Made by a program: the position numbers and the translations under genes. Shown piece after piece: positions 1,275 through 57,727 of a stretch of DNA of 64,000 bases; the stretch's first letter is position 1, and every line of letters begins with the position of its first letter. The notes beneath the pieces are model-generated. The model made no database searches and was not told where the DNA came from. It saw nothing but the letters and a program-made list of their open reading frames with translations. This stretch comes from Octopus sinensis. Lineage: Eukaryota. The DNA lies in contig NC_043001.1 of NCBI RefSeq assembly GCF_006345805.1, positions 30,442,001 through 30,506,000 of the forward strand, given 5' to 3'.

Positions 1275-1306
<32 letters not shown>

Positions 1307-1519: not shown

Positions 1520-1523
<4 letters not shown>
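1061..1523 (-). mobile_element. Two identical tandem copies of the RTE-type 3' module (245-bp period)
   Basis: 1061-1278 and 1306-1523 read identical, separated by (TA)n. Confidence 0.9.
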
Positions 1524-1576
<53 letters not shown>

Positions 1577-31334: not shown

Positions 31335-31614
31335 TTGGACAAATGTCTTCTACTATAGCCTCTGACCAAAGCCTTGTGAGTGGATTTGGTAGACAGAAAG
31401 TGAAAAAAGCCCATTGAATATATATATATATATATATACACTTGTGTTCCTCCCTACCACCATCGCTTGACAATCGATGTTGGTGTGTTTACATCCCTGT
31501 AACTTAAAGCTTTGGCAAAAGTGACTGATAGAATAAGTGCTAGGGTCGATCTGTTCAACTAGAGGTGGTGCTCCAGCATGGCCGCAGTCAAATTACTGAA
31601 ACAAGTAAAAGAAC
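31335..31614 (+). mobile_element. SINE family A, 5'-truncated
   Basis: Similarity to 574-956. Confidence 0.75.
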
Positions 31615-31799
31615 ATATATATATATACATATGTATATGCAGACGAGTAAGCTGAAATGTCAACCTTGTAAAATTTTAATAAGCATTTACTCTACAAAAA
31701 AAAGTATTCAGTAATCCTTTGGTTTAATGTTAAATTGTTTTTATATACAGCTCAACATAAGAACATATATAAATATGTCTATATATGTATGTGTAAGAT

Positions 31800-32650
31800 G
31801 TATGGGAGTCATAAAACCCAAAGATACACAGGAAACCTCTTTCCTTGAATGTCCCAGTGGTTCTCTGGAATTGTAGATAAGTTTTGCTACCTAGATAACA
31901 TAAGTAGCAGTGGAGGAGGTTGTTCAGAAAGTGTACTTGCTAGAATAAGATGGAAAAAGTTCTGACAGCTTTTGCCTCTGTTGGCAACCAATGGTCTCTC
32001 TCTCTCTCTCTCTAATTAAAGGGAAGATTGTATGCAGTATGGTAGTGATACATGGACCCTGAATGCAAAGGACATACAAAGGCAAGAGTGGTACAAAGCT
32101 AGTATGCTTTGCTGGTTGTGCAATGTCAGTACTGGTGTAATAAGAGTGATGTTGGGCATAAGAGGAATTATATGCAGTGTGCAAGAGAGGGGACTGTGCT
32201 GGTGTGGTTATATGATGCGGATGGATGCCGACAGTTGCTTTATGAAATACTGATCACTTAAAGTAGAAGGAAGTTGTGGAAGAGGAAGACATGGGATGAA
32301 GTATTGAAGGCTAATCTCAAAATGATGAGCCTTACAAAGGAGATGACAGGACCAAGATATTGTGGCAGATTGCTGTACTCAAGAAGACCTGCTTACCACA
32401 ACAGAATTGAGATCCTAGAATCAAGGTGCCACATAAAAAGCATGGGTGTAGATGCTGGTGTCATATAAAAAGCATTGGTGATGGTGCCATGTAAAAAGTA
32501 CCCAGTACACTCTGCAAAGTGGTTGGCGTTAGGAAGGGCATCCATAGAAACCAAGCTAAAACTATGGAATCTGGCAGCCCTTGACCTTGCCAGTTCCTCT
32601 CAAGCTGTTCAACCTGTGCCAGCATGGAAAATGAATGCTTGATGATGATG

Positions 32651-32655
<5 letters not shown>
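31800..32655 (+). mobile_element. RTE LINE 3' end (ORF C-terminus + 3' UTR + (GAT)n tail)
   Basis: YGSDTWTLNAKD...LCWCGYMMRM..RKTWDEV followed by the ttggcgttaggaagggcatcc...catggaaaa..gatgatgatg module found throughout the window. Confidence 0.75.
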
Positions 32656-32716
<61 letters not shown>

Positions 32717-32896
32717 TATTAGTTATCGCCATACTAATATGGCATTCTTATAAAAATAAGAATAAAGCTGACCGCTTATTAGCTCCATGAGGCCATCGCC
32801 TTAAGTTAGCTATTTGATACACAAACTGTATCCATATAACCTTTGAACAAGGGAGGTCAGTCTTTTAGAGAGACTTAGTAATTTTAATATTTCTAT

Positions 32897-32957
<61 letters not shown>

Positions 32958-33246
32958 AAGAGATAATGATGAAAATAAACAAATAAACATGCTTTGGCAT
33001 GTACATTTCATTTTTCATTTTTTTTCATTTTCATCTAGTTTCAGCTCACGAGCTGTGGCCATGCTGGGGCACCGCCATTCGGTGTTGCTACATGATTTTA
33101 CTTCTCAAATGCTTTTTAGCAATTGACATTTGGTGCATGAGAGAGTTTGATGCAGCTGCCCTTACATACTTATATACATGTAAATATATTTAGGGATACA
33201 TAGAGAGAGAAACAAAAACTGAAAATATTCAGAAGGTAAACATTCA

Positions 33247-33519
33247 GGTACTATTTAAGACGAGTGGTCCCTGTGCACGCACTTGCGTACTCGCACATCC
33301 ACGCTAGTTAGTTGTGACTAGTCAATCCTACAACGACTACCTAGCAAAGTAAATAAAACACAAAATAAATAATTTTTTTACACAAAGTAAATAAAACACA
33401 AAAACACAAATAAGTTTTTAAACAAATTAAATAAAACACAAAGTAAGGATCGACTAGTCACGACTAGCTAGCACGGATTCGCGAGTACGCGAGAGCGCAC
33501 ACTCTTCTTAAATAGTACC
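33247..33519. mobile_element. Long-TIR MITE with 9-bp TSD (Merlin- or Mutator-like)
   Basis: ~85-bp imperfect TIRs starting GGTACTATTTAAGA; TSD aaacattca at 33238-33246 and 33520-33528. Confidence 0.88.
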
Positions 33520-34388
33520 AAACATTCATGTATAAGCATATAGATATTCATATATTTACAGAACAGATTTACAATGAGTACAAAAGATAAGAAGACTAAG
33601 GGGAGAGAGAGCATGGTAATTCAGGCCTGATAGTTGTTTCTTGTGGCTCGGAATTATGTAATAGTTGTAATGTTGGCGGTGTCCCAGCATAGCCGCGGCC
33701 TTCGGGCTAAAACATTTTTAAGGATTTTAAGAATATGCAACCAGTAGTGGATACATATAAACATTACTGTAAATCCAGCGTCTGTCTTGGGGGTGGAGAG
33801 ATTGGCATTTAACATTTCATGTCATAATACAGAGAATTTAAGGGTGGAACAGTTGAAGAAGGTAAATAGAGGTAGGAGGAAGTTGGCTGTTTGGGGGTGA
33901 GGAAAGTGTGGGAGCAGGAAGGGCAAGAGGAGAAGGAGATTGAGAGAAGCAGAAGTGATTTGAAAGGGTGGGATGGGAGTATTGTGAAGGGTGGTGGTGG
34001 TGTTGGGTTTGACAACAGATATTGTTAATCAGGAATGATGGAGGCTATAGAACTGAGAAAAGGAAGCAGGTACAATGAGAGAAGGGCCAGATGGGTCTTG
34101 AAATGAAGGGAAGGGATCTAGTTATAGATGCCAACAAGGAGGTGAAGGGGAAATTCGAAGAATGAAGGGGGGATTGGTGGCAGAGGGAGAATATTGAAGT
34201 AGGTAGGAAGGTATGAGAGTAAACAGAGAAAAGTGGACAAATAGACAGAAAGGGAGGGATAACTTGGTAAACAATGGCAAGGAAAGCTAGGAGGAGGTGC
34301 AGAAGGAATTTCAAGTATGAGAGCCAACAGTATAGGAGGATGTGCTAGATAGGAGGAATGTGTAAAGAGAATCAGTGTGTGTGTATAT

Positions 34389-34419
<31 letters not shown>

Positions 34420-35226
34420 CATACATACATATATATAGGGAAGGTATAAGTAGAAGGGATGTGTTGCTAGCACAACTAACTTGTAATTTAAGGTTGTATC
34501 ATAATTAGGGGAGTTATATTAGATTTTATTTAATAAGGCAAACAATGAATAAAATTTGTGTTTTCATGAAAGGATTACATCTGAGAATTTATTGAGTCAT
34601 GGGGAATTGTGGTGGCAGAGGATGGCAAGCAATTCTCTTACACACAATTTATAAACTCTGAGGTTGATATAGTACAGGTGATTCACAGATAATGAACCAG
34701 GATAGGATGTGTGTGTGTGTGTGTGTATATATATATACCAAATGAGTTAGGGGTTGTGGATCCAACCCTCTAAGGGATAATACTTATCCAATATACTGTT
34801 GGTATAATACCCAAATTATTAATACACAAGTGTTTTTAATTGCAATGCAATGAACTCACTTATTGTATTAAATGGGTGAAGGTAAAGAAATATTTTACCA
34901 TTAATTTATATTACAAATAAGAAAATGGAGAAACACATTAGTTGGTTTATCAGCTTTAGGATATTAGAATGTTTGTTTTATTTAATTAACAGAACTACAA
35001 CCATAATAACATACATATATACAGTATAAAATTCAATACATTTAAGATAAGAATACAAATCGTTATTAAAAAAACATTAATATAAATTGTTATATAGATA
35101 GATAGATAGATCAAAAGTTTGATTCAGACACCTTGGTACTCTGAGTTTCAGGTGTATAGCTAGTCTTTGGGCATTGGGGTCTGAATAAAAGTTTGATTGA
35201 AGAAAGTCAATGTTTATTGCTGGATG

Positions 35227-37900
35227 TTAATAATAATAATAATAATAATAATAATTGTGTACAGTGCTCAGGTGCACTACAACTCATCTAAAGTGTATAT
35301 ATAATCAGGTGTAGTTTCGACGGATTTCGGGAAGCATGAGGGCCTTAAAGGATGCAGTGTCATGGCAGTCAACAACTGATGCAGGCAGTTTATTCCACGC
35401 TTCAGCAACCCTGAGCGTGAAAAAATGTTTCCGAAAGTCATGGGCTGTGCTGTTTTCTGACTTTGTAGGCATGTCCACGTGTGTTAGACACATGGAGATC
35501 AAAAGGTGTTCAGTGTTGTTGTTGGTGAGGTGGTTGATAACCTTGTGGGTGTTTTACCAAGTCCGTCGCCAGACGCCGGAGCTTCAGTGAATCCATGCCC
35601 AGGGAAACAAGGCGCTCAGAATATGGTAGGTGTCTGATGGAGGGTATGCGTTTGGTTGCACGTCTCTGGACAGATTCCAGGAGGTCAATGTTCTGAGCAA
35701 GATAGGGATTCCAAACTGATGATGCGAATTCCAAGTGTGGTCGTACCATAGCTGTATACAGTTTTAAATAGATGGCTGGAGAGCGGCTAACAAAAGTCTT
35801 GCTGAGTGATGCCAAGACACCCTCGGCCTTCTTGACAATTTTTAGAGATATGCTTTGTATCCAACGCAAATCACTGCTAACAGTGATGCCTAGGTCATGC
35901 TCGCAAGAGGATTTCTTGATATCAGTGTTGTGAAGGGAGTATGTGGACGCAGGGTTTTTTCTCCCAAAATGCATGGTGGTACACTTGTCCACAGCCAGTT
36001 TCAGTTGCCAGTCTGTGATCCATTGCTGCATTGTGTCTAGGTCTGATTGCAGGAAAGAGTTGTAGACATCAGGATCAGTCCTCTTGATTTCAAGGTACAG
36101 CTTGATGTCGTCTGCATATTTCAATACTGTGGCATTCTTTAAATTGGCATCTATGTCATTAATGTATGCCACAACAGGAGGGGACCAAGGACAGATCCCT
36201 GTGGTACACCCGATGACATCTCATATGGTGTAGAGTGCTGTCCTAGAACTGTGACTACCACCTTTCGGCTGAGGATGAAGGATTTCAACCAGTTAAAAAG
36301 GTCATCCCCCACACCCATTGCAGAGAGTTTCACCATAAGCCTTTTGTGTGGCCAGAGTTGAAAGCCTTAGCAAAGTCAAGGTAGACAACATCCACCCATG
36401 AGCCACTGTCAGTGATCTGAGTAATGTCCTCAAGGAACTCGACAAGCTGGTCACTGCAGCTGGAGTTAGGGACAAATCCATATTGTGAGGGTCGGATGAG
36501 ACTGTGAGAGCTCCAGAAGTTCCAGAGTTTCTCTGACACACGATTCCATCAGTTTTGCAATACAGCTAGTGAGACTGACTGGGCGATAGTTGACAGGTGA
36601 TGTGCGGTCACCCTTTTTGAACAGAGGAATGACACTGGCAGTTTTCCACTGCTCCAGAGTAGCACCATTGTTGAGACTACTGGAAGAAAATAGAAAGCTG
36701 GTGTAAAAGGAAGTGCCTGCCACGTTTGAGAAGCAGGTATGTAACTCCATCGAGACCAGGGGAGGCATAGTTGCGCTTATTTTGAAGGTGACGTCGCAGC
36801 ATTGCAGGTGTAAATTCCATAGTTGTTATGGAGTTTGCTGTTAGTGATGGTGAAGATGGTACATTTTGACTTTCGACAGTGAATATGTTTGCATAGCACT
36901 CGGCAATGAGTTCTGCGCATTCCTTGGGGTCGTCAGTGATCTGGTTTGTGTGAGGGTTGCGAAGAGAGTGAGGTCTCTGCTTTGAATGCACATATTTCCA
37001 GAAAACCTTGCTGTCAGGATTGGCTGCTATGCACTGTTCAAATTCAAGCACTGCATTTTTTGTCACTTGCTTGAGATGGTTGGAGGATTTATTCCGCTTC
37101 TTCCTGTTGGTGTCTGATTTATGCAACTTGTATTCCTGTTCAGCAGTCCGACATTCCTTCCTGGCAAGTCGGACTGCTGAAGTTTCCCAAATTGCCCTTT
37201 TGGGGTGGTTCTTCTTTTTTGTTTACGTGGCCTGATGCTGCACATGCTGCCCATATTGAGTCCAGGATACTCTGGAGTATAGTATTCACATCTCCAGAGT
37301 TGTAGAATTCACGCCAGTTTGGGTGCTGTAGTTCAGTGTGGTACAGGTTCCAATCTACTCTCTTCCAATCGAAGGAAGCAGATTGGAGATGGTTCAGGTG
37401 TTTGTTGCCCGCAAGAGCCAGATTGGCGATGATCATAGCATGATCAGAGTCACCTAGAGGTTCCTCCGTAGTGCAATTGATAACCGCTTCAGGAGTTGTG
37501 GTGAAGAGCAGGTCCAAGGTGTTGTCGCCTCTTGTTGGAGAGGTGACTACTTGTGACCAGTTTGAGTCCAGCACAAGCTCAACAAAATCGTTTGCACTCT
37601 GTGGCCAACGGAAGGTTTCCCAATCGATCTCAGGATGATTGAAATCGCCTGCAATAAACACATAAGTGGCTGTTTTCCTGGCTGCAGCTCGGAGGATGTT
37701 GCAAAGCTGTGTGTCCTGATGGTAATTTGGGGGACAATAAACAACGCCAAGCAGGAGTGTTGACATGGTCATACGTACGTCACAGAAAAAAACTTCTTCT
37801 TGTGATTCATTCAAATCGGCACAAGGAATTACCAAAAAATTTGAACGAACGTAGACCATCACACCACCACCACGGCGGTGCAATTAATTGCACGGCGGTG
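35227..37900 (-). mobile_element. CR1-clade LINE, 5'-truncated, endonuclease + RT, multiple frameshifts, (TTA)n tail
   Basis: RRGGGVMVYVR, IAGDFNHPEIDW, PTRGDNTLDLL, SDHAMI (APE); YRPVSLTS, YLDFAKAF, GVPQGSVLGPLL, KYADDIKL, RPHLEFAS, KHFFTLRVAEAWNKLP; tail at 35227-35254. Confidence 0.93.
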
Positions 37901-38431
37901 CAATTAAGCCTGCAATTGGTCAAGAAAAGTCATGTCGTATAACAGTTTGATGTCAGTATTTCAGGGACAACAATTAGTTGGAAAATATCACATAGTGAGC
38001 AGGAAATCGACCACATGGTGGACAAGAAATTGGTTGTGTGGTTGGGGTAAGTGGGAAGGAGCAGATGTGGTGGCATATATATCTGTGTGTGTGATGTCCA
38101 TATATCTGTGCGTATACATCCATACTTATACGAGTGTATATGTGTGCTTAGATGTACATTCAAACACACACACATGAAGGCACATGCATGTGCTCAGATA
38201 CACATGCACACATACCTTTATCTCCATGTACATATGGACACAAGCATATATATATATATATATATATATATAATCAACAGGTGAAATGCTCAATATAGAA
38301 CACATGTAGAAGTGTAAGTTTAAATGATTTGAACTTACACCCCATGAAGACTAGGTCCACGGGGTAAAGAGTGGCTATAAGAGAAATCCAGGTGAGTTGA
38401 TATGGAGATAGTGATGCAGATAAACAGCTTG

Positions 38432-38436
<5 letters not shown>

Positions 38437-38510
<74 letters not shown>
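38437..38510. repeat. (CT)n(AT)n microsatellite
   Basis: Directly visible, abuts MITE copy 1. Confidence 0.95.
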
Positions 38511-38513
<3 letters not shown>

Positions 38514-38518
38514 ATTTT

Positions 38519-38931
38519 ATGATGTTTTCGGTTTGAACGGCAGTTTTTAACATAATTCTAGGTAACTAAAAATTTTAAACTTCGTATACTGGTAGAATGT
38601 GTTAATAAAACATCTTTTTCTCTTGGCTTTATTGAGAAAATTCTATAATTTGTAAGATATTTGTTGTTGTTTTATTCTTCAATTTCTGCAATTTCAACCA
38701 ATCACTATTGAGGTAAAAAAAAACATTCTGTGCCGTATGAATATGTCCCTCGTTTAAGAAACAGATTGGGTTTATTTACATTTGTGAAGAAAAAAATGAT
38801 ACCCTTCCCCCAACCCTAACCCTAACCCTAAAACAGATTGAAATGCAATAGATCGATACTAGTGTCATAATTATGAGTGACAATTTCATGACACCGCTAG
38901 AAAAAACTGCCGTTCAAACCGAAAAGATCCC
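38519..38931. mobile_element. MITE with internal (CCCTAA)n, copy 1
   Basis: TIR (gggatc)ttttcggtttgaacggcagttttt; caaccctaaccctaacccta at about 38811-38830. Confidence 0.85.
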
Positions 38932-39358
38932 AACAGTTTACTATTGTATGTTACGTGGAATACTTTTTGTTCTTTAACCCCAGATTTTGTGGGTTATGAC
39001 TGTTGTTTAGTTCCAGATCAGTCCTGACCGATCAAAGTTTTGCGATCATGACTACCTTGCTTTTCTCTGGCATAATGCATCTTGAACGTTTTCTCCTTTT
39101 GACTTAGCTCTTTCTAGGACAGGTCTTTGCGATATCAGTGATGATACAATCTATGCATCCCACTGCAGTCCGTGAAGAACTGTTCTGTTATTCTTTTGTT
39201 ATTATTCATAGTCAATGTCAACAGGCTACATTAAACAGAATAGAATAAAATTCAAGTAAAGGAATTGCGGATAATATATACAATAGGAATTGAGATTTGC
39301 TGACACCGCAAGAATTGAAGTCAATCTTCTGTCAATAAGTTAAATTAGAAATATTAAC

Positions 39359-39462
39359 ATGTCTTCTAGTAAACAAAAACGTAACTTTCGCAAACGGCGA
39401 TGTTCATCGTCATCCGAAAGTGCTGATGAAGATGCTGAATCTGGGAATACGGATCAAGTTGC
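39359..39462 (+). CDS. C9orf78: C9orf78 exon 1
   Basis: ATG; MSSSKQKRNFRKRRCSSSSESADEDAESGNTDQV; GC|gtaagt. Confidence 0.88.
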
Positions 39463-42400
39463 GTAAGTCTATTAAGTATCTTATATTTTACTTGGGGATG
39501 TAATTATTCGAAAGCTTACAAGAAGTTATGAACACCAAATAATTCTTGTGTGTATATATTCGTCTCCTCCATGGCATTTATACATTTTCGGTTTGAACGG
39601 CAGTTTTTTCTAGCGTCACTCATAATTATGACCTTAGTATCGATCTATTGCATTTCAATCTGTTTTAGGGTTAGGGTTAGTTAGGGTTGGGGGGAAAGGA
39701 TATCTTTTTTTTCTTCACAAATGTAAATAAACTTAATCTGTTTCTTAAACGAGGGACATATTCATACGGCACAGAATGCTTTTTAACTCAATAGACGTCA
39801 CTGATTGGTTGAAATTGCAGAAATTGAAGAAAAAAAAACAACAACAAATATCTTACAAACTATAGAATTTTCTCAATAAAGCCAAGAGAAAAAGATGTTT
39901 TATAAACACATTCTACCAGTATACGAAGTTTAAAATTTTTTAGTTACCTAGAAATTATGTTAAAAACTGCCGTTCAAACCGAAAAGATCCCATTTATGCG
40001 AATTATTATCTGGCAAAATGTAAATTAACCTGTCGGTGGAGGTTGTTATTTAGTTGCGGAGTACATGTTCATGTATTCTTGATACTCTAACGAAATGTTT
40101 TTAGCTCCAAGCTTGCGGATTGAACATATCTATAATCAAAAGCATATTTAACTTTTGGGCATCTCATTCTTTTTGCTCTATTATGTATTAAAAAATACGG
40201 CGATCCTTCGGTATAAGTACCGGAAGTGGCTTTGTTTACATTTCTGAAGATAGCAGAAACCCTTTTCTCTCACTCCTAACCCTAACACAAACCTTAACCC
40301 TAGCCCTAACCCTAATCCCCCATATATATATAAAAAAAAACACTTTCTTGAAATGTATCCGGTACTTATACCGAAGTTACGCCAAAAATACATTATATAG
40401 TTTGAGAATCGCTGGTTGTTTGGCTGCTATTTCAAACAAGTCGAGTGACCACAAATATGCTGCCAGATTGGGTTTCCGTAAATGTGATTGATCACTAGGA
40501 ATGCTGTCAACTGTTAGGAATGGAGAAAGATAGGGGTGGGGGTGGGGATAAACACAGGCACACACACAAATATATACATATATTTGTAATACATAAGTAT
40601 TTGCGGCCGGTCCCTGTTTTTGAGAATAGTTCTCCCTCTCACTCCATCAGTCCTGAAATTATGGATACTAATCTTTCCTCTAACTAAGCAATAATAATAA
40701 TAGTAATAAAAATAATAATAATAATCCTTTTTACTAAAGGTACAAGGCCTGAAATTTGTGGGTAGGGGACTAGTCGATTATATCGACCCCAGTGTTTCAC
40801 TGGCACTTAATTTATTGACCCCAAAAGGATGAAAGGCAAAGTCGACCTCAGTGGAATTTGAACTCATAACGTAAGGATGGACGAAATGCCGCTTAGCATT
40901 TCGCCCGGTGTGCTAATGATTCTGCCAGCTCACCACCTTATAATAATGATAATGCTGTGAACCTCATTTGCACTTTATACATAACTATATGTAAGGAGTA
41001 TGGTTAGTTAATAAAACACACTTTGAAAAGCTCTTTTACTCTATGTAACAGAAAGTGTTGCTGTATAATTTTCTTTTAATGTAAATAGTACACATCTTAT
41101 TTTAGTTTCTTGTTGCAATCTTTCATTAAATATTATTATGCTTATATAATTTGATATTAGAAGTAGTGTGAAAGCACGTGGCTTAGTGGTTAAGGCAATC
41201 GGCTCACAATCATAAGGTCGTGTGTTCGGTTCCTGGTGGCATGCTATATACTTGAGCAGGACACTTTATTTCATATTGCTCCAGTCCACTCTGCTGACAA
41301 AAATAAGTAGTACCTGTATTTCAAAGGGCCAACCTTGTCAGGTTCTGTATCACCTTGAAAACTATGATAAGGGTATGCATGCCTAATGGAGTGCTCAGCC
41401 ACTTGCATGTTAATTTCACATGCAGTATCAACTGGAAACCTCATCGTTGTAACATGGAGTGCCAATTTTAGAAATATTAGGTTGTCTGGAAAGTTGTGAG
41501 CATTTTTAAGCTAAATCTTTTAATGATTCATTGAACACACCTGGAATGTAACACTTTGGCGTTGCTTGAAGTGGTAGTGCATCTCTTTGTTCCTCACTAA
41601 AAATAGAAATTTGACAAGACAGTCAGTCACCGGCTGACACTCGCTGACGATACATCGAAGAGGCCAGGGAACAGAAGAAAGAAGACATGCACCCAACACC
41701 AGAGCTGAAGACACCTCCGAAAGGGGGGGGGTCCCGCCACGTCAAAACGGTAGAAGAGTAGGGGCCGAAACCGGACGTGGTTCCTCCTGATGATGTATTG
41801 AGCTAACTGGATCCTATAAAGGAGCTGTTGTGGTAGCAGACCACAAAACACGGTTGTAATTCCTTCCTTCGTTCTGGTTACCCTTTATCGACATTTAAAA
41901 TGGATACCCCAAAATTTCATATTTGCATTGTAATGCTTTTCTTTTTTAAAGGAGAAAATGTAAAGATTTGCAAAATCATTTGTTAAGTTTATGGTGATGA
42001 TGCTGTAGGTAAATCAACTGTTTGAAGGTGGTTTGCAAAATTTAAAGCCGGAGAGTTTAGCTTGGAAGATGACAGTTGCAGTGGAAGACTTTCAAAATTG
42101 GATGAAGATATTTTGAAGGCAAAAATGAAAGAAAACTCAAATATCATGACTTGGGAACTTGCAGAGAAGCTGGAAGTTTCTAAAAGTACAGCTCATGAAC
42201 ACCTTCTGAAACTAGAGTACATTTCTTGCTATAATGTATGGGTCCCTCACAAATTCTCAGAAAAGAATTGCATGGACCTACCGGTCCATGCAAAGCTGGA
42301 CTGCGATGGACTGGCGTCCCGTCCAGCTGGGGAACACATACACCATTGAAACCAGGAAACCGGGCCCATGAGCCTGGCTAGGCTTTAAAAGGGCGCATTT

Positions 42401-45400
42401 ATTTATTTATTTAAAATATAAAGCACCAATAGGAAAATATTAAATAATCGGATAAAAATTTAAAACTAAGAAAATACAAAAATACCAACTGAAAATATAA
42501 TTGCTTTAGTTTTTGACATGCATATCAACATATACACACAAACACTATGTTATTATATTTTTTAAATGTTTTCTGTGATATTCACTTAGAAATGTTACAT
42601 GGATTTTATTGTAGAAGCAGTATGACTGATATAAAATTGCTTCAGAAGTTGAGAGAAAAACCAAGAGGAGTTAATGCAGCCAGTTTAGCCTTTGGTAAAA
42701 GTACAAAAAAGGATGAAATTGAAGCTGTAAGTGTAACTGTTTACTTATTTATCCTTTTAAATACTCTCTTTTTTTTCTTTTACTCTCTTTTACTTGTTTC
42801 AGTCATTTGACTGTGGCTATGCTGGAGCACCGCATTTAGTCGAGCAAATCGACCCCAGGACTTATTCTTTGTAAGCCTAGTACTTATTCTATCGGTCTCT
42901 TTTGCCGAACCACTAAGTTACAGGGATGTAAACACACCAGCATCAGTTGTCAAGTGATGTTGAGGGGACAAACACAGACACACAAACATATACACACACA
43001 TACATATATATATACATATATACGACGGCCTTCTTTCAGTTTCCGTCTACCAAATCAACTCATAAGGCTTTGGTCGGCCCAAGGCCATAGTAGAAGACAC
43101 CTGCCCAAGGTGCCACGTAGTGGGACTGAACCCAGAACCATGTGGTTGGTAAGCAAGCTACTTACCACCCAGCCACTCCTATGCCTAAAAATTTACTCTT
43201 AATAATTTCTTTTATTTTTTTTTTCATCTTCCCATCATTGGTTAAATATCTATGAATAAACATTTTCTAGTTTGAATATTTGAGAAGGAGATCATTGTCA
43301 TGGTGTTAGCTTTTTCCACACTAATGTGGATTAGATGAGAATTGCAGAGGCAGAATTCTATGTTTGGATGGCTTTCCTTTTGCCAGTCCTTACTTATTTC
43401 TAAATAAGGATTGGTAACCACTGTTGAATGATTAGACATGCTCTTATTACAGACACCAACAATGATTAGCCTTGCCATATTAGTAATGACATTGCCTCTG
43501 TTAAATGTTTAATGTCAAGACACAGATGGGAGTACACACACACACACATGTATGTACATATGTACCTACCTTCATACATTCGTATGTACTTATATATGAC
43601 AACACTGTATAGTTTCTACCTACCAGTTTCTCTCATGTTGGTCGACCTGAGACTATAGAACACAGTTTCTCACAGTGTCATGTAGTGGTACTGAACTCAA
43701 AATTATGTGCTTTCAAGGCAAATTCTTAATCACACATCATCATCATCATCATCGTTTAACGTCCGTTCTCCATGCTAGCATGGGTTGGACGGTTCGACCA
43801 GAGATCTGGAAGGCCTGAAGGCTGCACCAGGCTCCAGTCTGATCTGGCAGTGTTTCTTCAGCTGGATACCCTTCCTAACGCCAACCACTCCGTGAGTGTA
43901 GTGGGTGCTTTTTAAGTGTCACCTGCACAGGTGCCAGGCAAGGCTGGCAACGGCCACGATCGGATTGCTGCATTTTACGTGCCACCAGCACAGAAGCCAG
44001 TCGAGGCGGCATTGGCATCGCCATGATTTGGATGGTGCTTTTTACGTGTCACTGGCACGGAAGCCAGTCGAGGCGGTGCTGGCATCGGCCACGATTCGGA
44101 TAGTGCTTTTTACGTGCCACCGGCACGAACCATTAGGAATCTGAAAACAAAATCAAATAAGTATGCAAGTCAAAGGATATTTTTGTTATTAGTTTCATTG
44201 TATTGGTATTTAATTTATATGTATATTTACACACAGCATAACGTATTTATGGAATTTGTTCATTGAAAATGTTCGATAATTTGTAAAGGTCTTTAAGAAA
44301 TTATCACCATTTTCCATGTATTTCCAGAGTGACCCGTTCAAAATGAAAACTGGTGGAATTGTTGATATGAAAGCTTTAAAGAACAGCGTGTAAGCACAAT
44401 CTCAATTTATGTCAATCATGAGTCGCCATGATAAATCGTTAGCCACTACACACACTTATTTCTCTCCTTGTTTTTTCTGTGTCCCTTTCTGTAGAAGAGC
44501 GTAGGCTCAAAACGTAAAAGACTTTTTCTATTCCTGAGCGTTATACTAATACATCTGTTTGTTTTGTACACCACCTGTCTTCATCTTTTGTTTTTTTCGT
44601 AAACTCTCCCTATATTTAGAAATGTTTGTAATTGATTAATTTTTGTTTAATTGCTCATATCGGTTTCATTTGTTATATTAATGAAAAAAATTAATTATAT
44701 ATTTTGAGCGATAGAGTAATAATGAGTTAGTACTTTTTAACTATTTTATTGATTTTTAGCAAAATAATGTTTATTTCAATAATGATTTAATTATTATTGC
44801 TTTATCAGAGCAAAATACAAACTAAAATAATTTAATAACCAATATGGTAATATCTGATTGATTTTTTATACATTTCATCCTCAGATCACTGCAAGGAGGT
44901 GACATAGAATCAATAGGAACAGCTTTTGCTGCTGAGACAAACATTCGAGACGAAGATGCGGAAATGTAAGCATTATTTTAATGTTTTTTGTGTGTGTATG
45001 CATGTGTTAGTCAGAAGAAGAATGGTAGTGCCAATGGTCTTTAAGACCTACCACACTTCTGAGGTCAGTGTAGTTGACACTTAGTTTGAACATCTATAGG
45101 CAGATGTTTGCTGGATCAAGCTAAATATTCTTTTCTACTCTAGGCACAAGGCCTGAAATTTTGGGGGAGGGGGTCAGTCGATTAAATCGACTCCAGTACG
45201 CAACTGGTACTTAATTTATCGACCCCGAAAGGATGAAAGGCAAAGTAGACCTTGGCAGAATTTGAATTCAGAACGCAGCGGCGGACGAAATACCACAAAG
45301 CATTTTGCCCAGCGTGCTAACGTTCTGCCAGCTCGCCGCCTTCAAGCTAAATATTGCAAGGCTTGTATTTACTGTTTCTGTCTTGATTACATTTTTGTCC

Positions 45401-48400
45401 AAAATAATGCATTTGATGTCTGAAAAGAGCTGAAATATTTTGTCTTCTCTCTTTTTTTTTTTTTTAACTAAAACAAGCAAAGGATAAAGAAACCCATTGG
45501 TCATAAATGACTATGGAATTGCACTTACAAAGTTTCTCTCTGAGGCACAAGTCCAGGCAAGGTTGTTTATGGAAGACCAGCAGTCGTCCATGCATAACAG
45601 CCTCCCCTCTCCGTGCTAGCAATGTTATCCAAGGGAAAGGCAAAGGCTGTTACAACTTGACATCAGTGTCATTGCAACTCATTTCTACAGCTGAGTGAAC
45701 TGGAGCAATGTGAAATAAAATGTCTTGCTCAAAAACACAACACACAGCTCAGTCTGGGAATTGGACTCACTACCTCATGATTGTGAGCCCAACACTCTAA
45801 CCACTGAGTCATGCGCCTTTTTTTTAACAACTGAATATATATATATATTCAAATCAAATTCGATGACTGGCATCCGTGCTAGTGGAGTGCTAAGAGTACC
45901 ATACGAGCGTGATCGTTGTCAGAGCAACAAGCTGGCCTCCGTGCCAGTGGCACGTAAAAAACACCATTCGAGCATGTTTGTTACCTGCTTCACCTTACCT
46001 GCACTTGTGCTGGTGGCATGCGAAAAACATTCGAGCGAGTTCATTGCCAGTGCCGCTGGACTAACTTCTGTGCAGGTGACACATAAAAAGCACCATTTGA
46101 GCGTGGCCATTTCCAGTACCGCCTGACTGGCCCTCATGCCGGTGGCATATAAAAGTACCCACTACACACTCGGAGTAGTTGGCATTAGGAAGGGCATTCA
46201 GCTGTAGAAACTCTGCCAGATCAGATTGGAGTCTGGTGCAGCCATCTGGTTCGCCAGACCTGTTAAATCGTCCAACCCATGCTAGCATGGAAAGCAGACG
46301 TTAAATGATGATGATGATGATGATGATATATATATAAAGTAAACATAAATGTCATTTAAAATTTATGACAGCTGTTTTGGTAGAACTTTGTTTATTTAAT
46401 GCAGTCATAAAATATTACATCATAATATATAATAATCCACCATCATCAGGTAAAATTCTAAGCAGGTAAGATGTATGTATGTACATACATATGTACCTTC
46501 ACTAGCACAAAAGCACCCACTACACTCACTGAGTGGTTGGCATTAGGAAGAGCATCCAGCTGTAGAAACACTGCCAGATCAGATTGGAGCCTGGTGCAGC
46601 CTCCTAGCTTCGCAGACCCCGGTTGAACCATCCAACCCATGCTAGCATGGAAAACGGACGTTAAATGATGATGATGATGTATACGAAATGTTTTAACCCT
46701 TTTGTTATTAACCTGCCCAAGACTGCCCCTTGTTCCATGATACAAGCTCCCTGTTTTAAAGTGATCTAAATTAAAACCTTCAGTCAAAATTCCATGTTAA
46801 TTTATGTTCTAAACCCTGGTTTAATAATAATTGGGTTATTTCATGAAGTTTTCATCATTTTCAAAATTAGTCAAAATGAAGAAATATGGTAAGAAAAGGA
46901 TTAACAGTATCTTTTGCCTGTGTCACTTGAAAACTGTAATGCAGTAATATTATAGGGTTTATGGAAAATGAAATATTTTATTTAGCTACTTTTGTGCCTT
47001 CTTTTTTTTTCCATTTTTTAATAGGTTGAAATATGTAGAGGAAGAATTGGCCAAGAAGAAAGGGCATGTTACAGAAAAAAGCCAAGAGAAGTAAGTTTTT
47101 TTTTTTTTTCACTTGTTCTTGTCATTAGACTGTGACCATGCTGGGGCACCATCTTGATAACAATACCAAATTATAAAACAGTTTTACTTTTCAGAATGAA
47201 ACAAAACTAATAGTAAGATGGAAAATAATGTTTGGCCTGGTGCAGCCTCCTGGCTTCTCAGACCCCAGTCGAACCGTCCAACTCATGCCCGCATGAAAAA
47301 AATATGTTAAACGATGATGAAGATGACGGCTCCTCCTCCTCCTCCTCTTCTTCTTCTTCTTCCCCCTCCTCCTCCCTATGACACCATGAACATTTCGAAA
47401 TTATATTTGTGATCACATAAAACACTTTGAATATTATTTTAGCAAGTTTAATGTGATTTCTTTTGTACCGTAAGCCATTTACCATTTCTGTGGAGTCCCT
47501 CTTCACTTGATGCCCTAAGAATGTGCTTATTTTGTTTAATGGTTAATCCAGCACTGGTAGAGAAGCAAACTTCTTACCACACAGCCACGTTTGCTCCTGT
47601 TGTTCTAAACATGAAAATATTTGAAAAGTTGTTTGTTGCTTATCATTCTAATTATAATATATGTAATAAAAATTTCATGAACTACATCAAGTAAGCTAGA
47701 GATTGACTTCCAACGCAAGGTCTTGTCCTTTCTGTGGTGTTGAGATCACTGAGAGCTACATCAGAAGAGTGCAATCTCCCAGAAGGGCTCCTGTGTTGGA
47801 CAGGTCAAATAACAGAGGCCAGACTAATATGGACCCCATCTTCCCAAAGGTCAAAATGGGTTTGTGTAGGGCTAACACATCTACTTTAGAGAAAACAAAG
47901 CTACGGAAGCATCAATGACAATTCAAAACCAGCATAATCAGAGAGAGGGAAGCTTTTCCTCAAGAACATAAAGACAATGTATAAAATGGGAAGGACAGTA
48001 CAACTCAGAGTCTAAGAACAACAGGAAAAACTCACTGATGGCCTAGAGACCATTTTGAGCAAAGGGCTTAAGTCAGTAGATATTTACCTAAGCTCATTTT
48101 AAGAATTGCGATAATTTTAGAATTATTTATCACAATTTATTTTAGTGGGTTTATAAAATTTTTACAATTTCTAGTTATCATTTTACTTTCAATTTAATCT
48201 TTAATTTTTTTTTGTGAACAGACAAGCTCATGCCGAAGATGCACTTTACCAACTTCCTGAAAACCTAAAAGTTGAATCATCTACAAAGAAAAGTGAAGAC
48301 ATGTTGTCAAATCAGATGCTGTCTGGGATTCCAGAAATTGACCTTGGAATTGAGTATGTGGCAAATTTAAATTCTTTATATATAAATATATATATATATA

Positions 48401-48947: not shown

Positions 48948-51900
48948 GTAATGAAAATTTAACTGCCTTCCTTGAAATACCTATCAAGTTATTCTTTGTA
49001 ATTATGGTTCTAGTATATTTATTGTGAATATCTGAGATCCTTTGCTCATTTTATACATGTTTTTCTTTCCATTGCAACATAGGTTAAATAAAAACATATT
49101 ATCAAGGCATTGTTTTTACCTGGATGGCCTTTCTGTCACTATTTCTTTACTGTTTTTTAGTAAGAGATTTTTTTTTGTTCAGAACCACTGGACAATTTGT
49201 TGACCTGGAAATATCAACAGATGACAGCAACCCTAGTTCAGCTCAGTGCAGAGTGTAAACATTCACACTGACTCAGACATGCACATACCCTCATATCTGA
49301 CCTGGCTCTTTGGTGCCTTTAATGGAGTCCATTCTGTAGCTAGCATTCATGCTATGTTTCTATGTTTCTAGTTTAGAGATAACTCTTCTGCCAGTCTTAG
49401 AGGCTCTGAAAAAAAGGACATTGGTACTTCTTGATTAAGGAAAGGTGCATGGCCTAGTTGTTTACATATTGTACTTACAATTTCAAGATCATGGTTTCAA
49501 TGCACTGGGTAGTGCATCGTGTTCTTGAACAGGTCACTTCATTTCACATTACTCCAGTCCACTCAGCTGTAAAGGATAACCATTTGATGGATTGGTATCC
49601 TGTTCTGGGGAAATTTTGTGAGTCCTCAGACTCACAAGGGCCAGATTAAGTAATAAAAAGAAAGAAAGACACAGTAAATTAAATCTGTAGATAACAAAAT
49701 CAGTTCTGTTACTGCACCTTTTAAACTTAACTATCTCTTTTGTTAATATTTCACTTGCATAAAGCAGCGTGCTGGCAGAATTGTTAGCATGCCAAGCAAA
49801 ATGCTTAGCAGCGTTTCATCCATCTTCATGTTTTGAGTTCAAATCCCACTGAGGTTGACTTTACTTTGCATCCTTTTGGGGTCAATAAAATAAGCACCAT
49901 CTGAGCAATGGGGTCAAACTAATTAACTTACTCCCTCCCTCAGAGTTGCTTGTGTGATGCCAAAATTTGAAACCAGTATTTCACTTGTATTATTTTTTAC
50001 AGTGCTAAAATCAGAAACATTGAACATACAGAAGATGCCAAACAGAAGCTTGTTCAAGAAATGATGAAGAAGAAAGACAGTGAAGTCTCTGAATTTGTTC
50101 CTACAAATATGGCTGTGAATTTTGTACAACACAATCGCTGTAAATATCTGAAGTTATTTCTTTGTTTACCTTTTTCCTCCTACATTCTCATTTCAGCATG
50201 ACTAAAGTATGAGTGACTGCCTTAACCCTTTTGTTACTAACCCAGTCAAAACCGGCTCTGGCTCTGTGGTAAAATGTCTTGTTTTCATAAGTTTTTAATT
50301 AAAATATTCCACCAAACCTTAGTCACAATTTACGTTCCTAACACTAGCTTAATGATAACTAAGCTATTTGACTAAATTCTTTGTTATATTTAAAATAATT
50401 GAAAGAAACACAGAGCATCTCAAAATAAATACTGTAACGAAAGGGTTAATTAATTTGCTCTGTACTTGTTTTTGTTTAGAAACTAAATATTTTTCAAAAA
50501 TCTCCTCTATGTTGTGCTTTTTAAAACCTGTGTATATTCATGTTTCCTTGCTTAACAGTAAAAGAATGTTTATGTATGTCTTCATTGTTTTAATGTTCAC
50601 TTTTCCATGCTTGCATGGATCAAATGGAGTTCTATGAGGTAGATTTTTTCATGTCCAGATGTCCTTCTTGTCACCCACCATCACCTATTTCCAAGCAAGG
50701 TAATATTTCGCCATGGCCAGCCAGACACGTTTTCACAGAAAATTTGGAAATGAATGAATATCACAGCAGCATTCATTTACTACTGTCACACAATGTCAAG
50801 ACACAAACACACACTCACACATGCTCAATGGGCTTCTTCTTTCAGTTCCCATCTATCAAATACACTGGCATGGTTTTGGTTGGCCCTGAGCTGTAAGACA
50901 CTTGCCTTAGGTGCCATGCCCTGAGATTGAACCTGAAGCCATTTAGGTGGCAAGCAATCTTAATAATACTACTATATCTGCACCTGCATGATGTCATATG
51001 AATATTTTTTAAGCAGGCAAAAGACCCCAGATTCATAGGGAAAAGGAAAATGGAATGTGACAATTGGTCTTTTACCAAAATTATTAGCAGCAATGAATGA
51101 AGAATTATTAATTTCTGTTTATTTTATGCACAAACATTTGTTATTTTATGAAAATTGCTTAAAGTATTGGTAATATTATATAAACACTGAAATGTTTAAA
51201 ACCATATTTTGTCATTCTTTGCTTTTTTTCCTGTTTCTATTTATAGTTACAATTGAAGAAAGTGGACCGCGATTAAAAGACAAGCATTTACTTCTGAAAC
51301 CAAAGCTTCTCAGAGTGGGAGATGCTGAGAAAATTGGTGAAATGGATAAAAAATGTGAGTTGTAATTCATTTATTTTATACAATGGTATATGTGTAAGTT
51401 AGAGCTAAATAAAATTTTAATAAAGCTGGTTAGATGGGTGATAGCATTATGAAGCAAGTTAAATAATAAAATATATGAAAATGGCAAATATTGATATTTT
51501 GGTAGATAATTTTTGTGTGAGGTAACATTGATAAAATGGACATATACATTAGTAACTTTCTGTAATTATTTATATTTATATGTTTTGAACCAAATTCAAT
51601 GACTGGCACCCATGCCAGTGGAGCGCTAATAGCTCCATCCGAGCGGGATCACTGCCAGAGCAGCTGTCTGGCTTCCGTGCCGGTGGCATGTAAAAAGCAC
51701 CATTTGAGTGTGAACGTTACCAGCATCGCCTTACTGGCACTTGTGCCAGTGGCACATGAACAAAACATTTGAGCGAGGTCGTTGCCAGTGCCGCTGGACT
51801 GACTCCTGTGCAGGTGGCATGTAAAAAACACCATTTGAGTGTGGCTGTTGCCAGTACCGCCAGTCTGGCCCTCATGCCAGTGGCATGTAAAAGCACTCAC

Positions 51901-56234: not shown

Positions 56235-56621
56235 GTGGAGGCGCAATGGCCCAGTGGTTAGGGCAGCGGACTCGCGGTCATAGGATCGTGGTTTCGATTC
56301 CCAGACCGGGCGTTGCGAGTGTTTATTGAGCGAAAACACCTAAAGCTCCACGAGGCTCTGGCAGGGGATGGTGGTGATCCCTGCTGTACTCTTTCACCAC
56401 AACTTTCTCTCACTCTTACTTCCTGTTTCTGTTGTACCTGTATTTCAAAGGGCCGGCCTTGTCACTCTCTGTGTCACGCTGAATATCTCCGAGAACTACG
56501 TTAAGGGTACACGTGTCTGTGGAGTGCTCAGCCACTTACACGTTAATTTCACGAGCAAGCTGTTCCGTTGATTTGGATCAACAGGAACCCTCGTCGTCGT
56601 AACCGACGGAGTGCTTCCAAC
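56235..56621 (+). mobile_element. tRNA-headed SINE family D, full length with 12-bp TSD
   Basis: A box tggcccagtgg, B box ggtttcgattccc; TSD aatagcagaagc at 56223-56234 and 56622-56633. Confidence 0.9.
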
Positions 56622-57727
56622 AATAGCAGAAGCAGTTGAAGAATTAGAGGAAAAATTCTGAATGTGGAGGCTGTGCCTAGAATCAAGAGACTTAAAAGTA
56701 AACATGTTCAGGATAAAAGCTTTAGTTAGTAGGTGAGAAAACAGAACTCTACAACTGTCTGGAAAGAAGCCTAGCATAATATGCAGAAAAGGAGTAGGTA
56801 GGAACTCTATATCAAACATCCAATGTCAAAAACAGACGTTAAATGATGAGGATGATGATGATGAACTATGGGCACAAAAGATGCAGTGAGGTCACAGACA
56901 GGCTGAAAGAGGAAGATTTCATATATAGTAGCTGCACAGGAGTCAGCAGTAAAAGCACATTAAAAATGCATGCTTTCAAATGCCCAGAAAGGTCAGCATT
57001 AGTAGTTGACACCTTCTGATAACAAGAAACCAAATCAACAACATATTTAAAAAAATTTTAAAAACAAAAAGTACATTTAAGTCTCCCAATTAACATGGTG
57101 TAAAAATTTCTGTTTATTAGATGAATAGGATCAAACTTTATAAAATATAGTTTCAAGGAGCCTTTTAAAATGCAGTATGTCAAAAGTCATACAAAAATTT
57201 ATCTCCCAGTATTAATGTGTACTATTGATTTCAATCACAATTGGATTTTCTTAACAGAAAAAGTATTGGGTGAGACATTTATAGACTTTAAGTTATTCTT
57301 AAGAAAGTAATGTGACATGAGTAAAAAACAAAAAAAAACAAAAAAATGACTAATTTGTGTGAAACTGGTGTCATTAAAGAAATAGATGAAATGGTAGTTA
57401 AGTCTGTTAAGAGTAGACTGGTCTTTAGAAAAAAATAAACATGTAAGAAAATGATGTCCCATACAAAAGCAAAGCTTGCAACTGAATAAACACCTATTTT
57501 TATTTGTTTCCTTGTTTTAGTAACTTATTTACTAATGACCTTTCAAATGTATTAAGCTTTAAAGCTCAACAGATTAAAATTAAATTTAAGGAAGCTTGAA
57601 TTTTCTTGCATTATTCTTGTCAAAACATTTTGCAGCCATAATGGGGGTGGGGAAGAGATAATAAAATGAACTCAGTAGCAATAATATAAAAAGTTAAATT
57701 AATTTATAATTGCTAGGAGATACAATA

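What the first reader, a model, noticed from the sequence alone, without database searches (positions are those of the whole stretch)
38519..39991. C9orf78 exon 1 and proximal promoter are bracketed by two inverted copies of the same ~410-bp MITE
Seen: 38519-38931 and 39579-39991 are reverse complements (about 90% or more identical by eye) enclosing a ~650-bp spacer that holds the ATG, all of exon 1 and its 5' splice site. Each copy has its own TIRs. Both carry CCAAT (copy 1 near 38699); copy 2 also keeps a CRE-like TGACGTC that is deleted in copy 1. Inference: (a) recombination could invert the exon-1 cassette; (b) if transcription starts in or before copy 1, the pre-mRNA forms a ~400-bp duplex looping out exon 1, a likely ADAR substrate given the heavy A-to-I editing known in coleoids; (c) outer ends could move the cassette as a composite transposon; (d) the MITE may supply promoter motifs.
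Basis: partly seen in the sequence, partly recalled or inferred. Interest (0 to 1): 0.7.

Follow-up and report, generated by a model that had tools for sequence, protein, structure and literature searches.

The report
Inverted MITE pair around octopus exon 1
Two copies of a small non-coding transposon really do sit in opposite orientation on either side of the first coding exon of the octopus C9orf78 splicing-factor gene. They are recent, lineage-specific insertions: one related species lacks them and in another one copy is flipped, so this looks like ordinary transposon litter rather than a regulatory device.

Summary
Window 38520-38930 (+) and 39585-39990 (-) are two copies of one ~410-bp element with 28-nt terminal inverted repeats. 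They are 89.1% identical with gaps counted and about 97% at aligned bases. They enclose a 654-bp spacer holding the ATG (39359), the 104-nt exon-1 coding part and its GTAAGT donor (39463).

The window is Octopus sinensis chromosome CM016863.1, and the gene is the C9orf78/TLS1 homolog (Pfam Hep_59).

Both copies occupy the same sites in O. vulgaris. The 31.8-kb O. bimaculoides locus has none, and there the sequence runs straight across the copy-2 site.

A third, 185-bp related element with a perfect 8-bp target-site duplication lies 208 bp downstream of copy 2.

In the O. vulgaris reference the interior of copy 2 is flipped, so the two copies are direct repeats there. That flip is bounded by a perfect 89-nt inverted duplication with microhomology at both junctions.

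The 85 nt before the ATG are identical in all three species, and O. bimaculoides tolerates a ~390-bp repeat insertion just upstream of them. This suggests transcription starts well downstream of copy 1, which argues against the exon-1 hairpin.

Verdict: a real but ordinary, recent transposon cluster. None of the four functional inferences is supported.

The parts
38520..38930 (+). MITE copy 1 (411 bp), ending 428 bp upstream of the ATG. No target-site duplication. Its left flank is not collinear with O. bimaculoides.
38521..38548 (+). Left 28-nt TIR of copy 1. It pairs with 38902-38929, and as the outer end it pairs with 39953-39989 of copy 2 (37 nt, 97%).
   Evidence: I23, I6
38902..38929 (+). 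Right TIR of copy 1. The inner ends of the two copies, 38895-38925 and 39585-39615, are 31 nt and 100% complementary.
   Evidence: I12, I23
38698..38702 (+). CCAAT inside copy 1. The adjacent 7-nt CRE-like piece is deleted in O. sinensis only.
38814..38831 (+). Telomere-like (CCCTAA)3 block inside copy 1.
   Evidence: (D4)
38931..39584 (+). Native spacer (654 bp), collinear and in the same orientation in O. vulgaris and O. bimaculoides. Positions 39274-39358 are identical in all three species.
39359..39462 (+). Coding part of C9orf78-homolog exon 1 (ATG to the GTAAGT donor at 39463). An alternative donor at 39476 explains the predicted O. sinensis isoform X2.
39575..39582 (.). CATTTATA, the left member of the 7/8 direct repeat flanking copy 2.
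39585..39990 (-). MITE copy 2 (406 bp) in intron 1, starting 122 bp after the donor. Its inner end lacks the terminal GGATC.
39668..39694 (+). G-rich telomere-like block of copy 2 on the sense strand (GGGTTAGGGTTAGTTAGGGTTGGGGGG), with four G-runs.
   Evidence: read from the sequence
39794..39800 (-). CRE-like TGACGTC next to CCAAT (39804-39808, minus strand) in copy 2.
39991..39998 (.). CATTTATG, the right member of the direct repeat flanking copy 2.
40199..40383 (+). Third, related 185-bp MITE with ~25-nt TIRs and a perfect 8-bp target-site duplication AAAAATAC (40191-40198 and 40384-40391). O. bimaculoides has a single AAAAATGC at this site.

Best explanation
What it is: a cluster of three lineage-specific insertions of non-autonomous, TIR-bounded DNA transposons around the 5' end of the Octopus sinensis C9orf78/TLS1 gene. 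Two are copies of a ~410-bp family and one is a 185-bp relative that made an 8-bp target duplication.

When (shown): the two ~410-bp copies entered after the split from O. bimaculoides and before the O. sinensis / O. vulgaris split.

Why they cluster (inferred): DNA transposons tend to land in accessible 5' regions of expressed genes, and to re-insert close to the donor site.

What it does (inferred): the opposite orientation of copies 1 and 2 is an accident of insertion with no conserved role. The gene is intact without the elements in O. bimaculoides. In the O. vulgaris reference the copies are direct repeats.

Main consequence (shown in one assembly; the mechanism is inferred): local structural instability. 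In O. vulgaris the interior of copy 2 was flipped by what looks like a two-step, microhomology-mediated template switch that also duplicated 89 nt in inverted orientation. The loss of a target duplication and of upstream collinearity at the left end of copy 1 suggests a second transposon-end-associated rearrangement (inferred).
For: Source and gene: the window is 100% identical to O. sinensis CM016863.1. The gene is confirmed by Hep_59 at E = 1.9e-28 and by 100% identity to P0001.

The repeat pair: E = 1e-158, with each copy carrying its own TIRs. The longest open frame in the element is 48 aa, and a search with its frame peptides found no protein.

Shared with O. vulgaris: both copies are at the same sites. 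Diagnostic indels pair c1 with c1 and c2 with c2 across species. In 335 ungapped columns there are 5 fixed paralog differences against 2-5 lineage-specific changes per branch.

Absent from O. bimaculoides: no copy in 31.8 kb. The copy-2 site reads GGCATTTATACATTTATGCG, which is the two flanks joined, and the right flank of copy 1 is collinear from window 38929.

Third element: related termini GG(C)GATC..TTCGGT, a shared internal telomere-like block, a perfect 8-bp duplication and a single-copy empty site in O. bimaculoides.

O. vulgaris flip: copy 2 aligns in plus orientation, with a perfect 89/89 inverted repeat at L002 10169-10257 and 10579-10667. The junction microhomologies, TTTCTAG and GTTCA.A, were read from the sequences.

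Start site: the 85 nt before the ATG have no substitution among three species, against 7.8% (sinensis vs bimaculoides) further upstream. O. bimaculoides has a ~390-bp insertion at about -86.

Background: inverted interspersed-repeat pairs within 3 kb are common in this window. For example, 43741-43912 / 46509-46679 (89%) brackets exons 3-4.
Against: No RNA data were available, so the transcription start, any editing and any promoter effect are untested.

Only about 105 kb of non-redundant O. sinensis / O. vulgaris DNA could be sampled (window, L004, L005). The family's copy number, autonomous partner and insertion preference are therefore unknown. Three related elements within 1.9 kb and none elsewhere in the sample is non-random clustering, and I explain it only by inference.

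Copy 1 has no target duplication.

The O. bimaculoides sequence at the copy-2 site already holds the 8-mer twice. It could be an excision footprint rather than a never-occupied site.

The O. vulgaris flip rests on a single ONT-based assembly (PMC10700109). The perfect identity of its 89-nt arms fits either a very recent event or a local assembly error.
Confidence: 0.8

Rival explanations
1. The pair acts through RNA. Transcripts starting in or before copy 1 fold into a ~400-bp duplex that loops out exon 1. This recruits ADAR and/or alters use of the exon-1 splice site.
For: If 38519-39991 is one RNA, the arms pair end to end (MFE -729 kcal/mol). Copy 2 is certainly intronic, 122 nt after the donor. 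An alternative donor 13 nt downstream is used in a predicted isoform.
Against: Copy 1 ends 428 nt before the ATG. The fully conserved block is only the last 85 nt, and O. bimaculoides tolerates a ~390-bp insertion at about -86. This suggests a start site downstream of copy 1. The arrangement is missing in O. bimaculoides and is direct rather than inverted in the O. vulgaris reference, while all three encode a 99-100% identical protein.
Confidence: 0.07
2. Copy 1 supplies cis-regulatory motifs (CCAAT plus a CRE-like site) and so contributes to the C9orf78 promoter in the O. vulgaris / O. sinensis lineage.
For: CCAAT and TGACGTC lie side by side in the element. Copy 1 lies 428-838 bp upstream of the ATG.
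Against: O. sinensis copy 1 has lost the CRE-like site through a 7-nt deletion. O. bimaculoides has no copy. Short motifs like these are frequent by chance. No expression data were available.
Confidence: 0.07
3. The two copies did not arrive as two simple insertions. One aberrant event, such as an alternative transposition involving sister chromatids or reversed ends, or an inverted duplication, created the second copy together with the upstream rearrangement.
For: Copy 1 lacks a target duplication. Homology with O. bimaculoides breaks exactly at its left end for several kb. The inner end of copy 2 is truncated. The locus has demonstrably undergone another template-switch-like event in O. vulgaris.
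Against: Copy 2 has sharp boundaries against the O. bimaculoides sequence and 7/8 flanking direct repeats. The spacer between the copies is unrearranged native sequence. The copies already differed by 5 substitutions and several indels before the species split.
Confidence: 0.1
4. The pair is a composite transposon or an invertible cassette that moves or flips exon 1.
For: The outer ends form a 37-nt, 97% inverted repeat, and the inner ends a 31-nt perfect one.
Against: The 8-mers outside the pair differ (TAATTTTA vs CATTTATG). The spacer is in place and in the same orientation in all three species, including the one without the elements. Inversion would detach the ATG exon from the rest of this apparently single-copy conserved gene.
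Confidence: 0.02

Closest known systems
Miniature inverted-repeat transposable elements (MITEs) near genes
   Same: It is short (~410 bp and 185 bp), AT-rich and non-coding, with 25-31-nt TIRs. It is present or absent between close species. It sits in the 5' flank and first intron of a gene. The third element shows an 8-bp target duplication.
   Different: Only two copies of the 410-bp family were seen in about 105 kb, so the high copy number usual for MITEs is unshown. Copy 1 has no target duplication. The superfamily and autonomous partner are unknown. The termini (GGGATC / GGCGATC) do not resemble the hAT terminal motif as I recall it.
Inverted Alu (SINE) pairs in primate pre-mRNAs, the classical ADAR substrates that also promote exon circularisation (from my own knowledge)
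   Same: Two inverted copies of one repeat flank an exon, and a long near-perfect duplex is predicted if both are co-transcribed.
   Different: Here the upstream arm is probably outside the transcription unit. No editing data exist. Better-placed intronic inverted pairs occur in the same gene (43741-43912 / 46509-46679).
Alternative transposition and macrotransposons formed by nearby Ac/Ds or P-element pairs (from my own knowledge)
   Same: Closely spaced elements in opposite orientation have compatible outer ends. One element end shows flank loss and a break in collinearity.
   Different: Nothing indicates that the composite ever moved: there is no shared outer duplication and the spacer is native. 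No transposase is known for the family.
Microhomology-mediated template-switch rearrangements (FoSTeS / MMBIR) giving inversions flanked by inverted duplications (from my own knowledge)
   Same: The O. vulgaris allele has an inverted interior, an 89-nt inverted duplication, a ~35-nt loss and 5-7-nt microhomology at both junctions.
   Different: It is seen in a single assembly with no read-level confirmation. It concerns copy 2 only, not the exon-1 cassette.

Membership tests
MITE (non-autonomous TIR DNA transposon) | Short length (under ~800 bp) with terminal inverted repeats | tested here: met
   The copies are 411 and 406 bp with 28-nt TIRs. The third element is 185 bp with ~25-nt TIRs.
MITE (non-autonomous TIR DNA transposon) | No coding capacity | tested here: met
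   The longest stop-to-stop frame is 48 aa. A protein search with all frame peptides gave nothing at E <= 10. No Rfam family matched.
MITE (non-autonomous TIR DNA transposon) | Target-site duplication flanking the element | tested here: inconclusive
   Third element: perfect 8 bp, AAAAATAC. Copy 2: 7/8, CATTTATA / CATTTATG, but O. bimaculoides already has both 8-mers. Copy 1: none.
MITE (non-autonomous TIR DNA transposon) | Insertion polymorphism with an empty site in a relative | tested here: met
   No copy in the O. bimaculoides locus, and the flanks are joined at the copy-2 and third-element sites.
MITE (non-autonomous TIR DNA transposon) | Many dispersed copies in the genome | tested here: inconclusive
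   Two copies plus one relative, all at this locus. There are none in the rest of the window, L004 or L005, about 105 kb in all. A whole-genome search is not possible with these tools.
hAT superfamily | 8-bp target duplication | tested here: inconclusive
   Met for the related 185-bp element, 7/8 for copy 2 and absent for copy 1.
hAT superfamily | Terminal motif of the (C/T)A(G/A)NG type (recalled from memory) and a hAT transposase partner | tested here: not met
   The termini read GGGATCTTTTCGG / GGCGATCCTTCGG. No partner element could be searched for. I therefore do not file it as hAT.
Composite transposon / macrotransposon | The whole unit is flanked by one target duplication and the enclosed DNA is foreign to the site | tested here: not met
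   The outer 8-mers differ. The spacer is orthologous native sequence in O. bimaculoides, which lacks the elements.
Intramolecular dsRNA substrate of ADAR (inverted-repeat type) | Long duplex predicted between the arms | tested here: met
   MFE -729 kcal/mol, with the arms paired along their length.
Intramolecular dsRNA substrate of ADAR (inverted-repeat type) | Both arms lie in one transcript | not testable with these tools
   No RNA data. Indirect evidence points to a start site within about 86 nt of the ATG, downstream of copy 1.
Intramolecular dsRNA substrate of ADAR (inverted-repeat type) | Clustered A-to-G mismatches between RNA and DNA | not testable with these tools
   No reads were available.

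The most novel reading that the evidence does not exclude
The inverted MITE pair is a young, species-specific modifier of an essential spliceosome-associated gene. In O. sinensis a minor upstream start site, possibly inside copy 1, would yield pre-mRNAs in which exon 1 is looped out by a ~400-bp duplex. Those RNAs would be hyper-edited or mis-spliced. In O. vulgaris the flip of copy 2 would have removed that duplex. The sibling species would then differ in C9orf78 5'-end processing because of a transposon-driven rearrangement.
Probability: 0.05. Interest if true: 0.4.

Novelty: new member of a known kind. Interest (0 to 1): 0.15.

Why it matters
It matters little beyond annotation. It documents a low-copy MITE family and a shorter relative with an 8-bp target duplication and an internal telomere-like block in the O. 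vulgaris / O. sinensis lineage. It dates their insertion to between the O. bimaculoides split and the O. sinensis / O. vulgaris split.

It also offers one concrete case of a transposon with symmetrical ends marking a rearrangement between sibling species, in intron 1 of a conserved gene.

For the scan, it is a caution. Inverted repeat pairs around exons are common in this repeat-rich genome, with at least one more in the same gene. They should not be read as regulatory without a mapped transcription start and editing data.

Tried and rejected
I located the exons with a from-memory human C9orf78 probe by tblastn and spliced them by hand.
- The look-up of the O. sinensis isoform X2 protein P0003 found nothing on record.
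- To find more copies of the element, I searched the protein collection with its concatenated six-frame peptides, hoping for spurious ORFs called on octopus contigs. Nothing scored at E <= 10.
- An exact scan of JGI metagenome contigs with a 23-nt TIR gave 0 hits.
- Two unrelated octopus loci fetched through LINE reverse-transcriptase hits (L004, L005) held no copy.
- A Logan transcript contig of a more distant relative (L006; its protein P0004 is 81% identical) has only 22 nt before the ATG. It says nothing about 5'UTR length.
- Rfam at gathering threshold found nothing in the window.
- ARAGORN found no tRNA in the O. bimaculoides insertion, so I do not call it tRNA-derived.
- The bacterial promoter scan was not used because it does not apply to an animal gene.
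- I considered and rejected an assembly artefact for the pair: it is present in two independent assemblies, O. sinensis and O. vulgaris.
- I considered and left open whether the O. bimaculoides copy-2 site is an excision footprint or an empty site. A rough local clock puts the insertion at no more than about 1.7 times the sinensis/vulgaris split, against about 2.2 times for the bimaculoides split. This mildly favours an empty site plus a 12-nt deletion at the element's inner end.
- A 17/20 match between a copy-1-specific 14-nt insertion (38883-38902) and the conserved promoter block (39295-39314, D10) is about what chance gives. My own estimate is roughly 0.3 such matches expected.
Full report
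**1. The observation**

Reading 38300-40200, the repeat finder and blastn of copy 1 against the whole window agree.
- 38521-38925 matches 39989-39585 on the opposite strand at 89.1% over 422 columns, with 12 mismatches and 8 gap openings (E = 1e-158).
- At aligned bases the copies are about 97% identical. Most of the difference is eight or nine indels.
- Each copy has its own 28-nt terminal inverted repeat (I23). Because copy 2 is reversed, the two outer ends match (37 nt, 97%) and so do the two inner ends (31 nt, 100%) (I6 and I12).
- Using the GGATC...GATCC termini, I place copy 1 at 38520-38930 and copy 2 at 39585-39990.
- CCAAT is at 38698-38702. The CRE-like site is at 39794-39800 on the minus strand, and copy 1 has a 7-nt deletion there.

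**2. The gene**

A from-memory human C9orf78 probe, used only to locate exons, found a colinear series of tblastn hits on the plus strand from 42.6 to 54.1 kb.

Splicing by hand gives these exons:
- exon 1, coding part: 39359-39462, with donor GTAAGT at 39463
- then 42615-42726, 44328-44389, 44885-44965, 47025-47090, 48222-48353 and 50003-50139
- later exons near 51.3 kb and 54.0 kb

The 231-aa partial product hits Pfam Hep_59 (E = 1.9e-28). It is 100% identical to a 295-aa Octopus protein (P0001) and 99% to 'splicing factor C9orf78 homolog [Octopus bimaculoides]'.

Copy 1 therefore ends 428 bp before the ATG, and copy 2 starts 122 bp into intron 1.

**3. Orthologous loci**

Look-ups of P0001 and P0002 returned the loci of O. 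bimaculoides (L001), O. vulgaris (L002) and O. sinensis (L003). L003 is 100% identical to window 29359-64000, so the window is O. sinensis CM016863.1.

In O. vulgaris both copies are at the same sites. Shared diagnostic indels pair copy 1 with copy 1 and copy 2 with copy 2. These include a 14-nt insertion and a 4-nt deletion in copy 1, and copy-2-specific run lengths. Both insertions therefore predate that split, and there has been no conversion between the copies since.

In O. bimaculoides there is no copy anywhere in 31.8 kb.
- At the copy-2 site it reads GGCATTTATACATTTATGCG, which is the two O. sinensis flanks joined.
- On the right side of copy 1, collinearity starts at window 38929.
- To the left of copy 1 there is no homology for several kb. 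Copy 1 also has no target duplication, which suggests a further rearrangement at that end.

**4. A third element and the type of transposon**

Window 40199-40383 is a 185-bp element with ~25-nt TIRs. It is flanked by a perfect 8-bp duplication, AAAAATAC, and is absent from O. bimaculoides, which has a single AAAAATGC.

It shares with the 410-bp family the terminal GG(C)GATC..TTCGGT motif and an internal block with telomere-like CCCTAA repeats. The elements are therefore related and belong to a class that makes 8-bp duplications.

Copy 2 is flanked by CATTTATA / CATTTATG. Because O. bimaculoides already has both 8-mers in tandem, two histories are possible:
- an empty site that happened to hold the 8-mer twice, followed by insertion and a 12-nt loss across the inner junction; or
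- an excision footprint.

Counting substitutions in 335 ungapped columns gives 5 fixed differences between the copies that predate the sinensis/vulgaris split, and 2-5 changes on each later branch. In the upstream flank, sinensis vs bimaculoides divergence is 7.8% against 3.5% for sinensis vs vulgaris. On this rough clock the insertions are younger than the bimaculoides split, which mildly favours the empty site.

I do not assign a superfamily. The termini do not look like hAT ends as I recall them, and no partner element could be searched for.

**5. Copy 2 is flipped in the O. vulgaris reference**

In L002 the interior of copy 2 aligns in plus orientation, the same as copy 1. The sequence reads, from left to right:
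- the 58-nt left flank
- the 31-nt inner TIR
- the interior in plus orientation, starting about 47 nt into the other end
- the inner TIR again
- the reverse complement of the 58-nt flank
- the last 12 nt of the outer TIR
- the right flank

The two 89-nt arms (L002 10169-10257 and 10579-10667) are identical at 89 of 89 positions. About 35 nt of the outer end are lost.

The first junction lies in a shared TTTCTAG, and the second in GTTCA(A/T)A. I read both.

This is the signature of a two-step, microhomology-mediated template switch (inference). The O. sinensis arrangement is the ancestral one, because it is a complete element relative to the O. bimaculoides site.

The O. vulgaris assembly is ONT R9.4.1 assembled with NextDenovo and polished with Hypo (PMC10700109). 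Perfect arms fit either a very recent event or a local assembly error, and I could not check reads.

If real, it shows that the inverted configuration is not conserved between species that split about 2.5 My ago (Amor et al. 2019, as cited in PMC10700109).

**6. Where transcription probably starts**

No RNA data were reachable. A related transcript contig has only 22 nt before the ATG.

In the three-way spacer alignment, the 85 nt before the ATG carry no substitution in any species. Further upstream, sinensis vs bimaculoides differ at 25 of 320 sites.

O. bimaculoides has a ~390-bp interspersed repeat inserted at about -86, directly upstream of a TATA-like ATATATAC (window 39274-39281).

The simplest reading is that the core promoter and 5'UTR lie within those 85 nt, about 350 bp downstream of copy 1. 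This is an inference, and I put it at roughly 85%.

**7.

(a) Inversion of the cassette. The spacer is in the same orientation in all three assemblies. Inversion would detach the ATG exon from the gene. In O. vulgaris, recombination between the now direct copies would delete exon 1 rather than invert it.

(b) RNA hairpin. The duplex forms if both arms are transcribed together (-729 kcal/mol), which is trivial for a 97% inverted repeat. The probable start site leaves copy 1 outside the RNA, and the arrangement is not conserved.

(c) Composite transposon. The outer flanks share no duplication, and the spacer is native sequence.

(d) Promoter motifs. The CRE-like site is already deleted in O. sinensis copy 1, and O. 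bimaculoides has no copy. A modulating effect is untested.

**8. Is the pair more than chance?**

The sequence similarity certainly is. Whether two copies so close together exceed random placement cannot be settled.

No further copy occurs in the rest of the window or in two unrelated loci, about 105 kb in all. This only bounds the density below about 3 per 100 kb, which gives a chance of up to about 8% for a second copy within 1.5 kb of the first.

With the related third element 208 bp away, the cluster looks non-random. Insertion preference for 5' gene regions and local re-insertion are the ordinary explanations (from general knowledge of DNA transposons).

Inverted pairs of other repeats within 3 kb are frequent in this window. 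One of them, 43741-43912 / 46509-46679 at 89%, brackets exons 3-4 and is certainly inside the pre-mRNA.

**9. Verdict**

This is a real, well-delimited but ordinary feature: a young cluster of MITE insertions at the 5' end of a housekeeping gene. There is no evidence of function, and there is evidence that the inverted geometry is evolutionarily labile.

- Novelty: a new member of a known kind.
- Interest: low.

Noticed in passing
window 40199-40383 (target duplications at 40191-40198 and 40384-40391): A 185-bp MITE related to the pair, with a perfect 8-bp target-site duplication AAAAATAC. It is present in O. vulgaris and absent in O. bimaculoides.
   Followed up: yes
L002 (O. vulgaris OX597818.1) 10169-10680: The interior of copy 2 is flipped relative to O. 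sinensis. The flip is bounded by a perfect 89-nt inverted duplication, with about 35 nt lost and microhomology at both junctions. It is either a template-switch rearrangement or a local assembly error.
   Followed up: partly
L001 (O. bimaculoides) about 9518-9907, related to window 56235-56623: A ~390-bp interspersed repeat is inserted about 86 nt upstream of the C9orf78 ATG in O. bimaculoides only, flanked by TGCGGAT direct repeats. ARAGORN finds no tRNA in it.
   Followed up: partly
L001 10213-10228 (the copy-2 site in O. bimaculoides): The site without the element reads CATTTATA CATTTATG, holding both flanking 8-mers. It is either an excision footprint or a pre-existing tandem 8-mer.
   Followed up: partly
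window 31555-38520 vs L001 5613-9169: The intergenic DNA between PGAP2IP and C9orf78 is not homologous between O. sinensis and O. bimaculoides. The break lies exactly at the left end of copy 1.
   Followed up: partly
window 35231-37903 (minus strand): A LINE fragment with endonuclease-like (37140-37883) and reverse-transcriptase (35510-36172) open frames. It is present in O. sinensis but absent from the O. vulgaris locus, so it is a recent insertion or deletion.
   Followed up: partly
window 43741-43912 and 46509-46679: An inverted pair of a SINE-like repeat (89% over 172 bp) lies in introns 2 and 4, bracketing exons 3-4. Unlike the MITE pair it is certainly inside the pre-mRNA, so it is a better candidate for dsRNA or back-splicing.
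   Followed up: no
window 39668-39694 (and 38814-38831 on the other strand): The element carries three telomere-like TTAGGG units. In copy 2 the G-rich strand is the sense strand of intron 1 and has four G-runs, a G-quadruplex-type motif.
   Followed up: no
window 39426-39477: The predicted O. sinensis isoform X2 (P0003) is explained by an internal ATG at 39426 in another frame, plus an alternative donor GT at 39476, 13 nt after the main donor.
   Followed up: yes
window 1039-1551: A 245-bp unit is repeated 2.1 times at 100% identity, with microsatellite ends. It is either a very recent tandem duplication or an assembly artefact, and it lies next to a PGAP2IP-like exon (ORF 1592-2089).
   Followed up: partly
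window 38883-38902 and 39295-39314: A 17/20 match between a copy-1-specific insertion and the fully conserved block upstream of the ATG. By my estimate about 0.3 such matches are expected by chance.
   Followed up: partly
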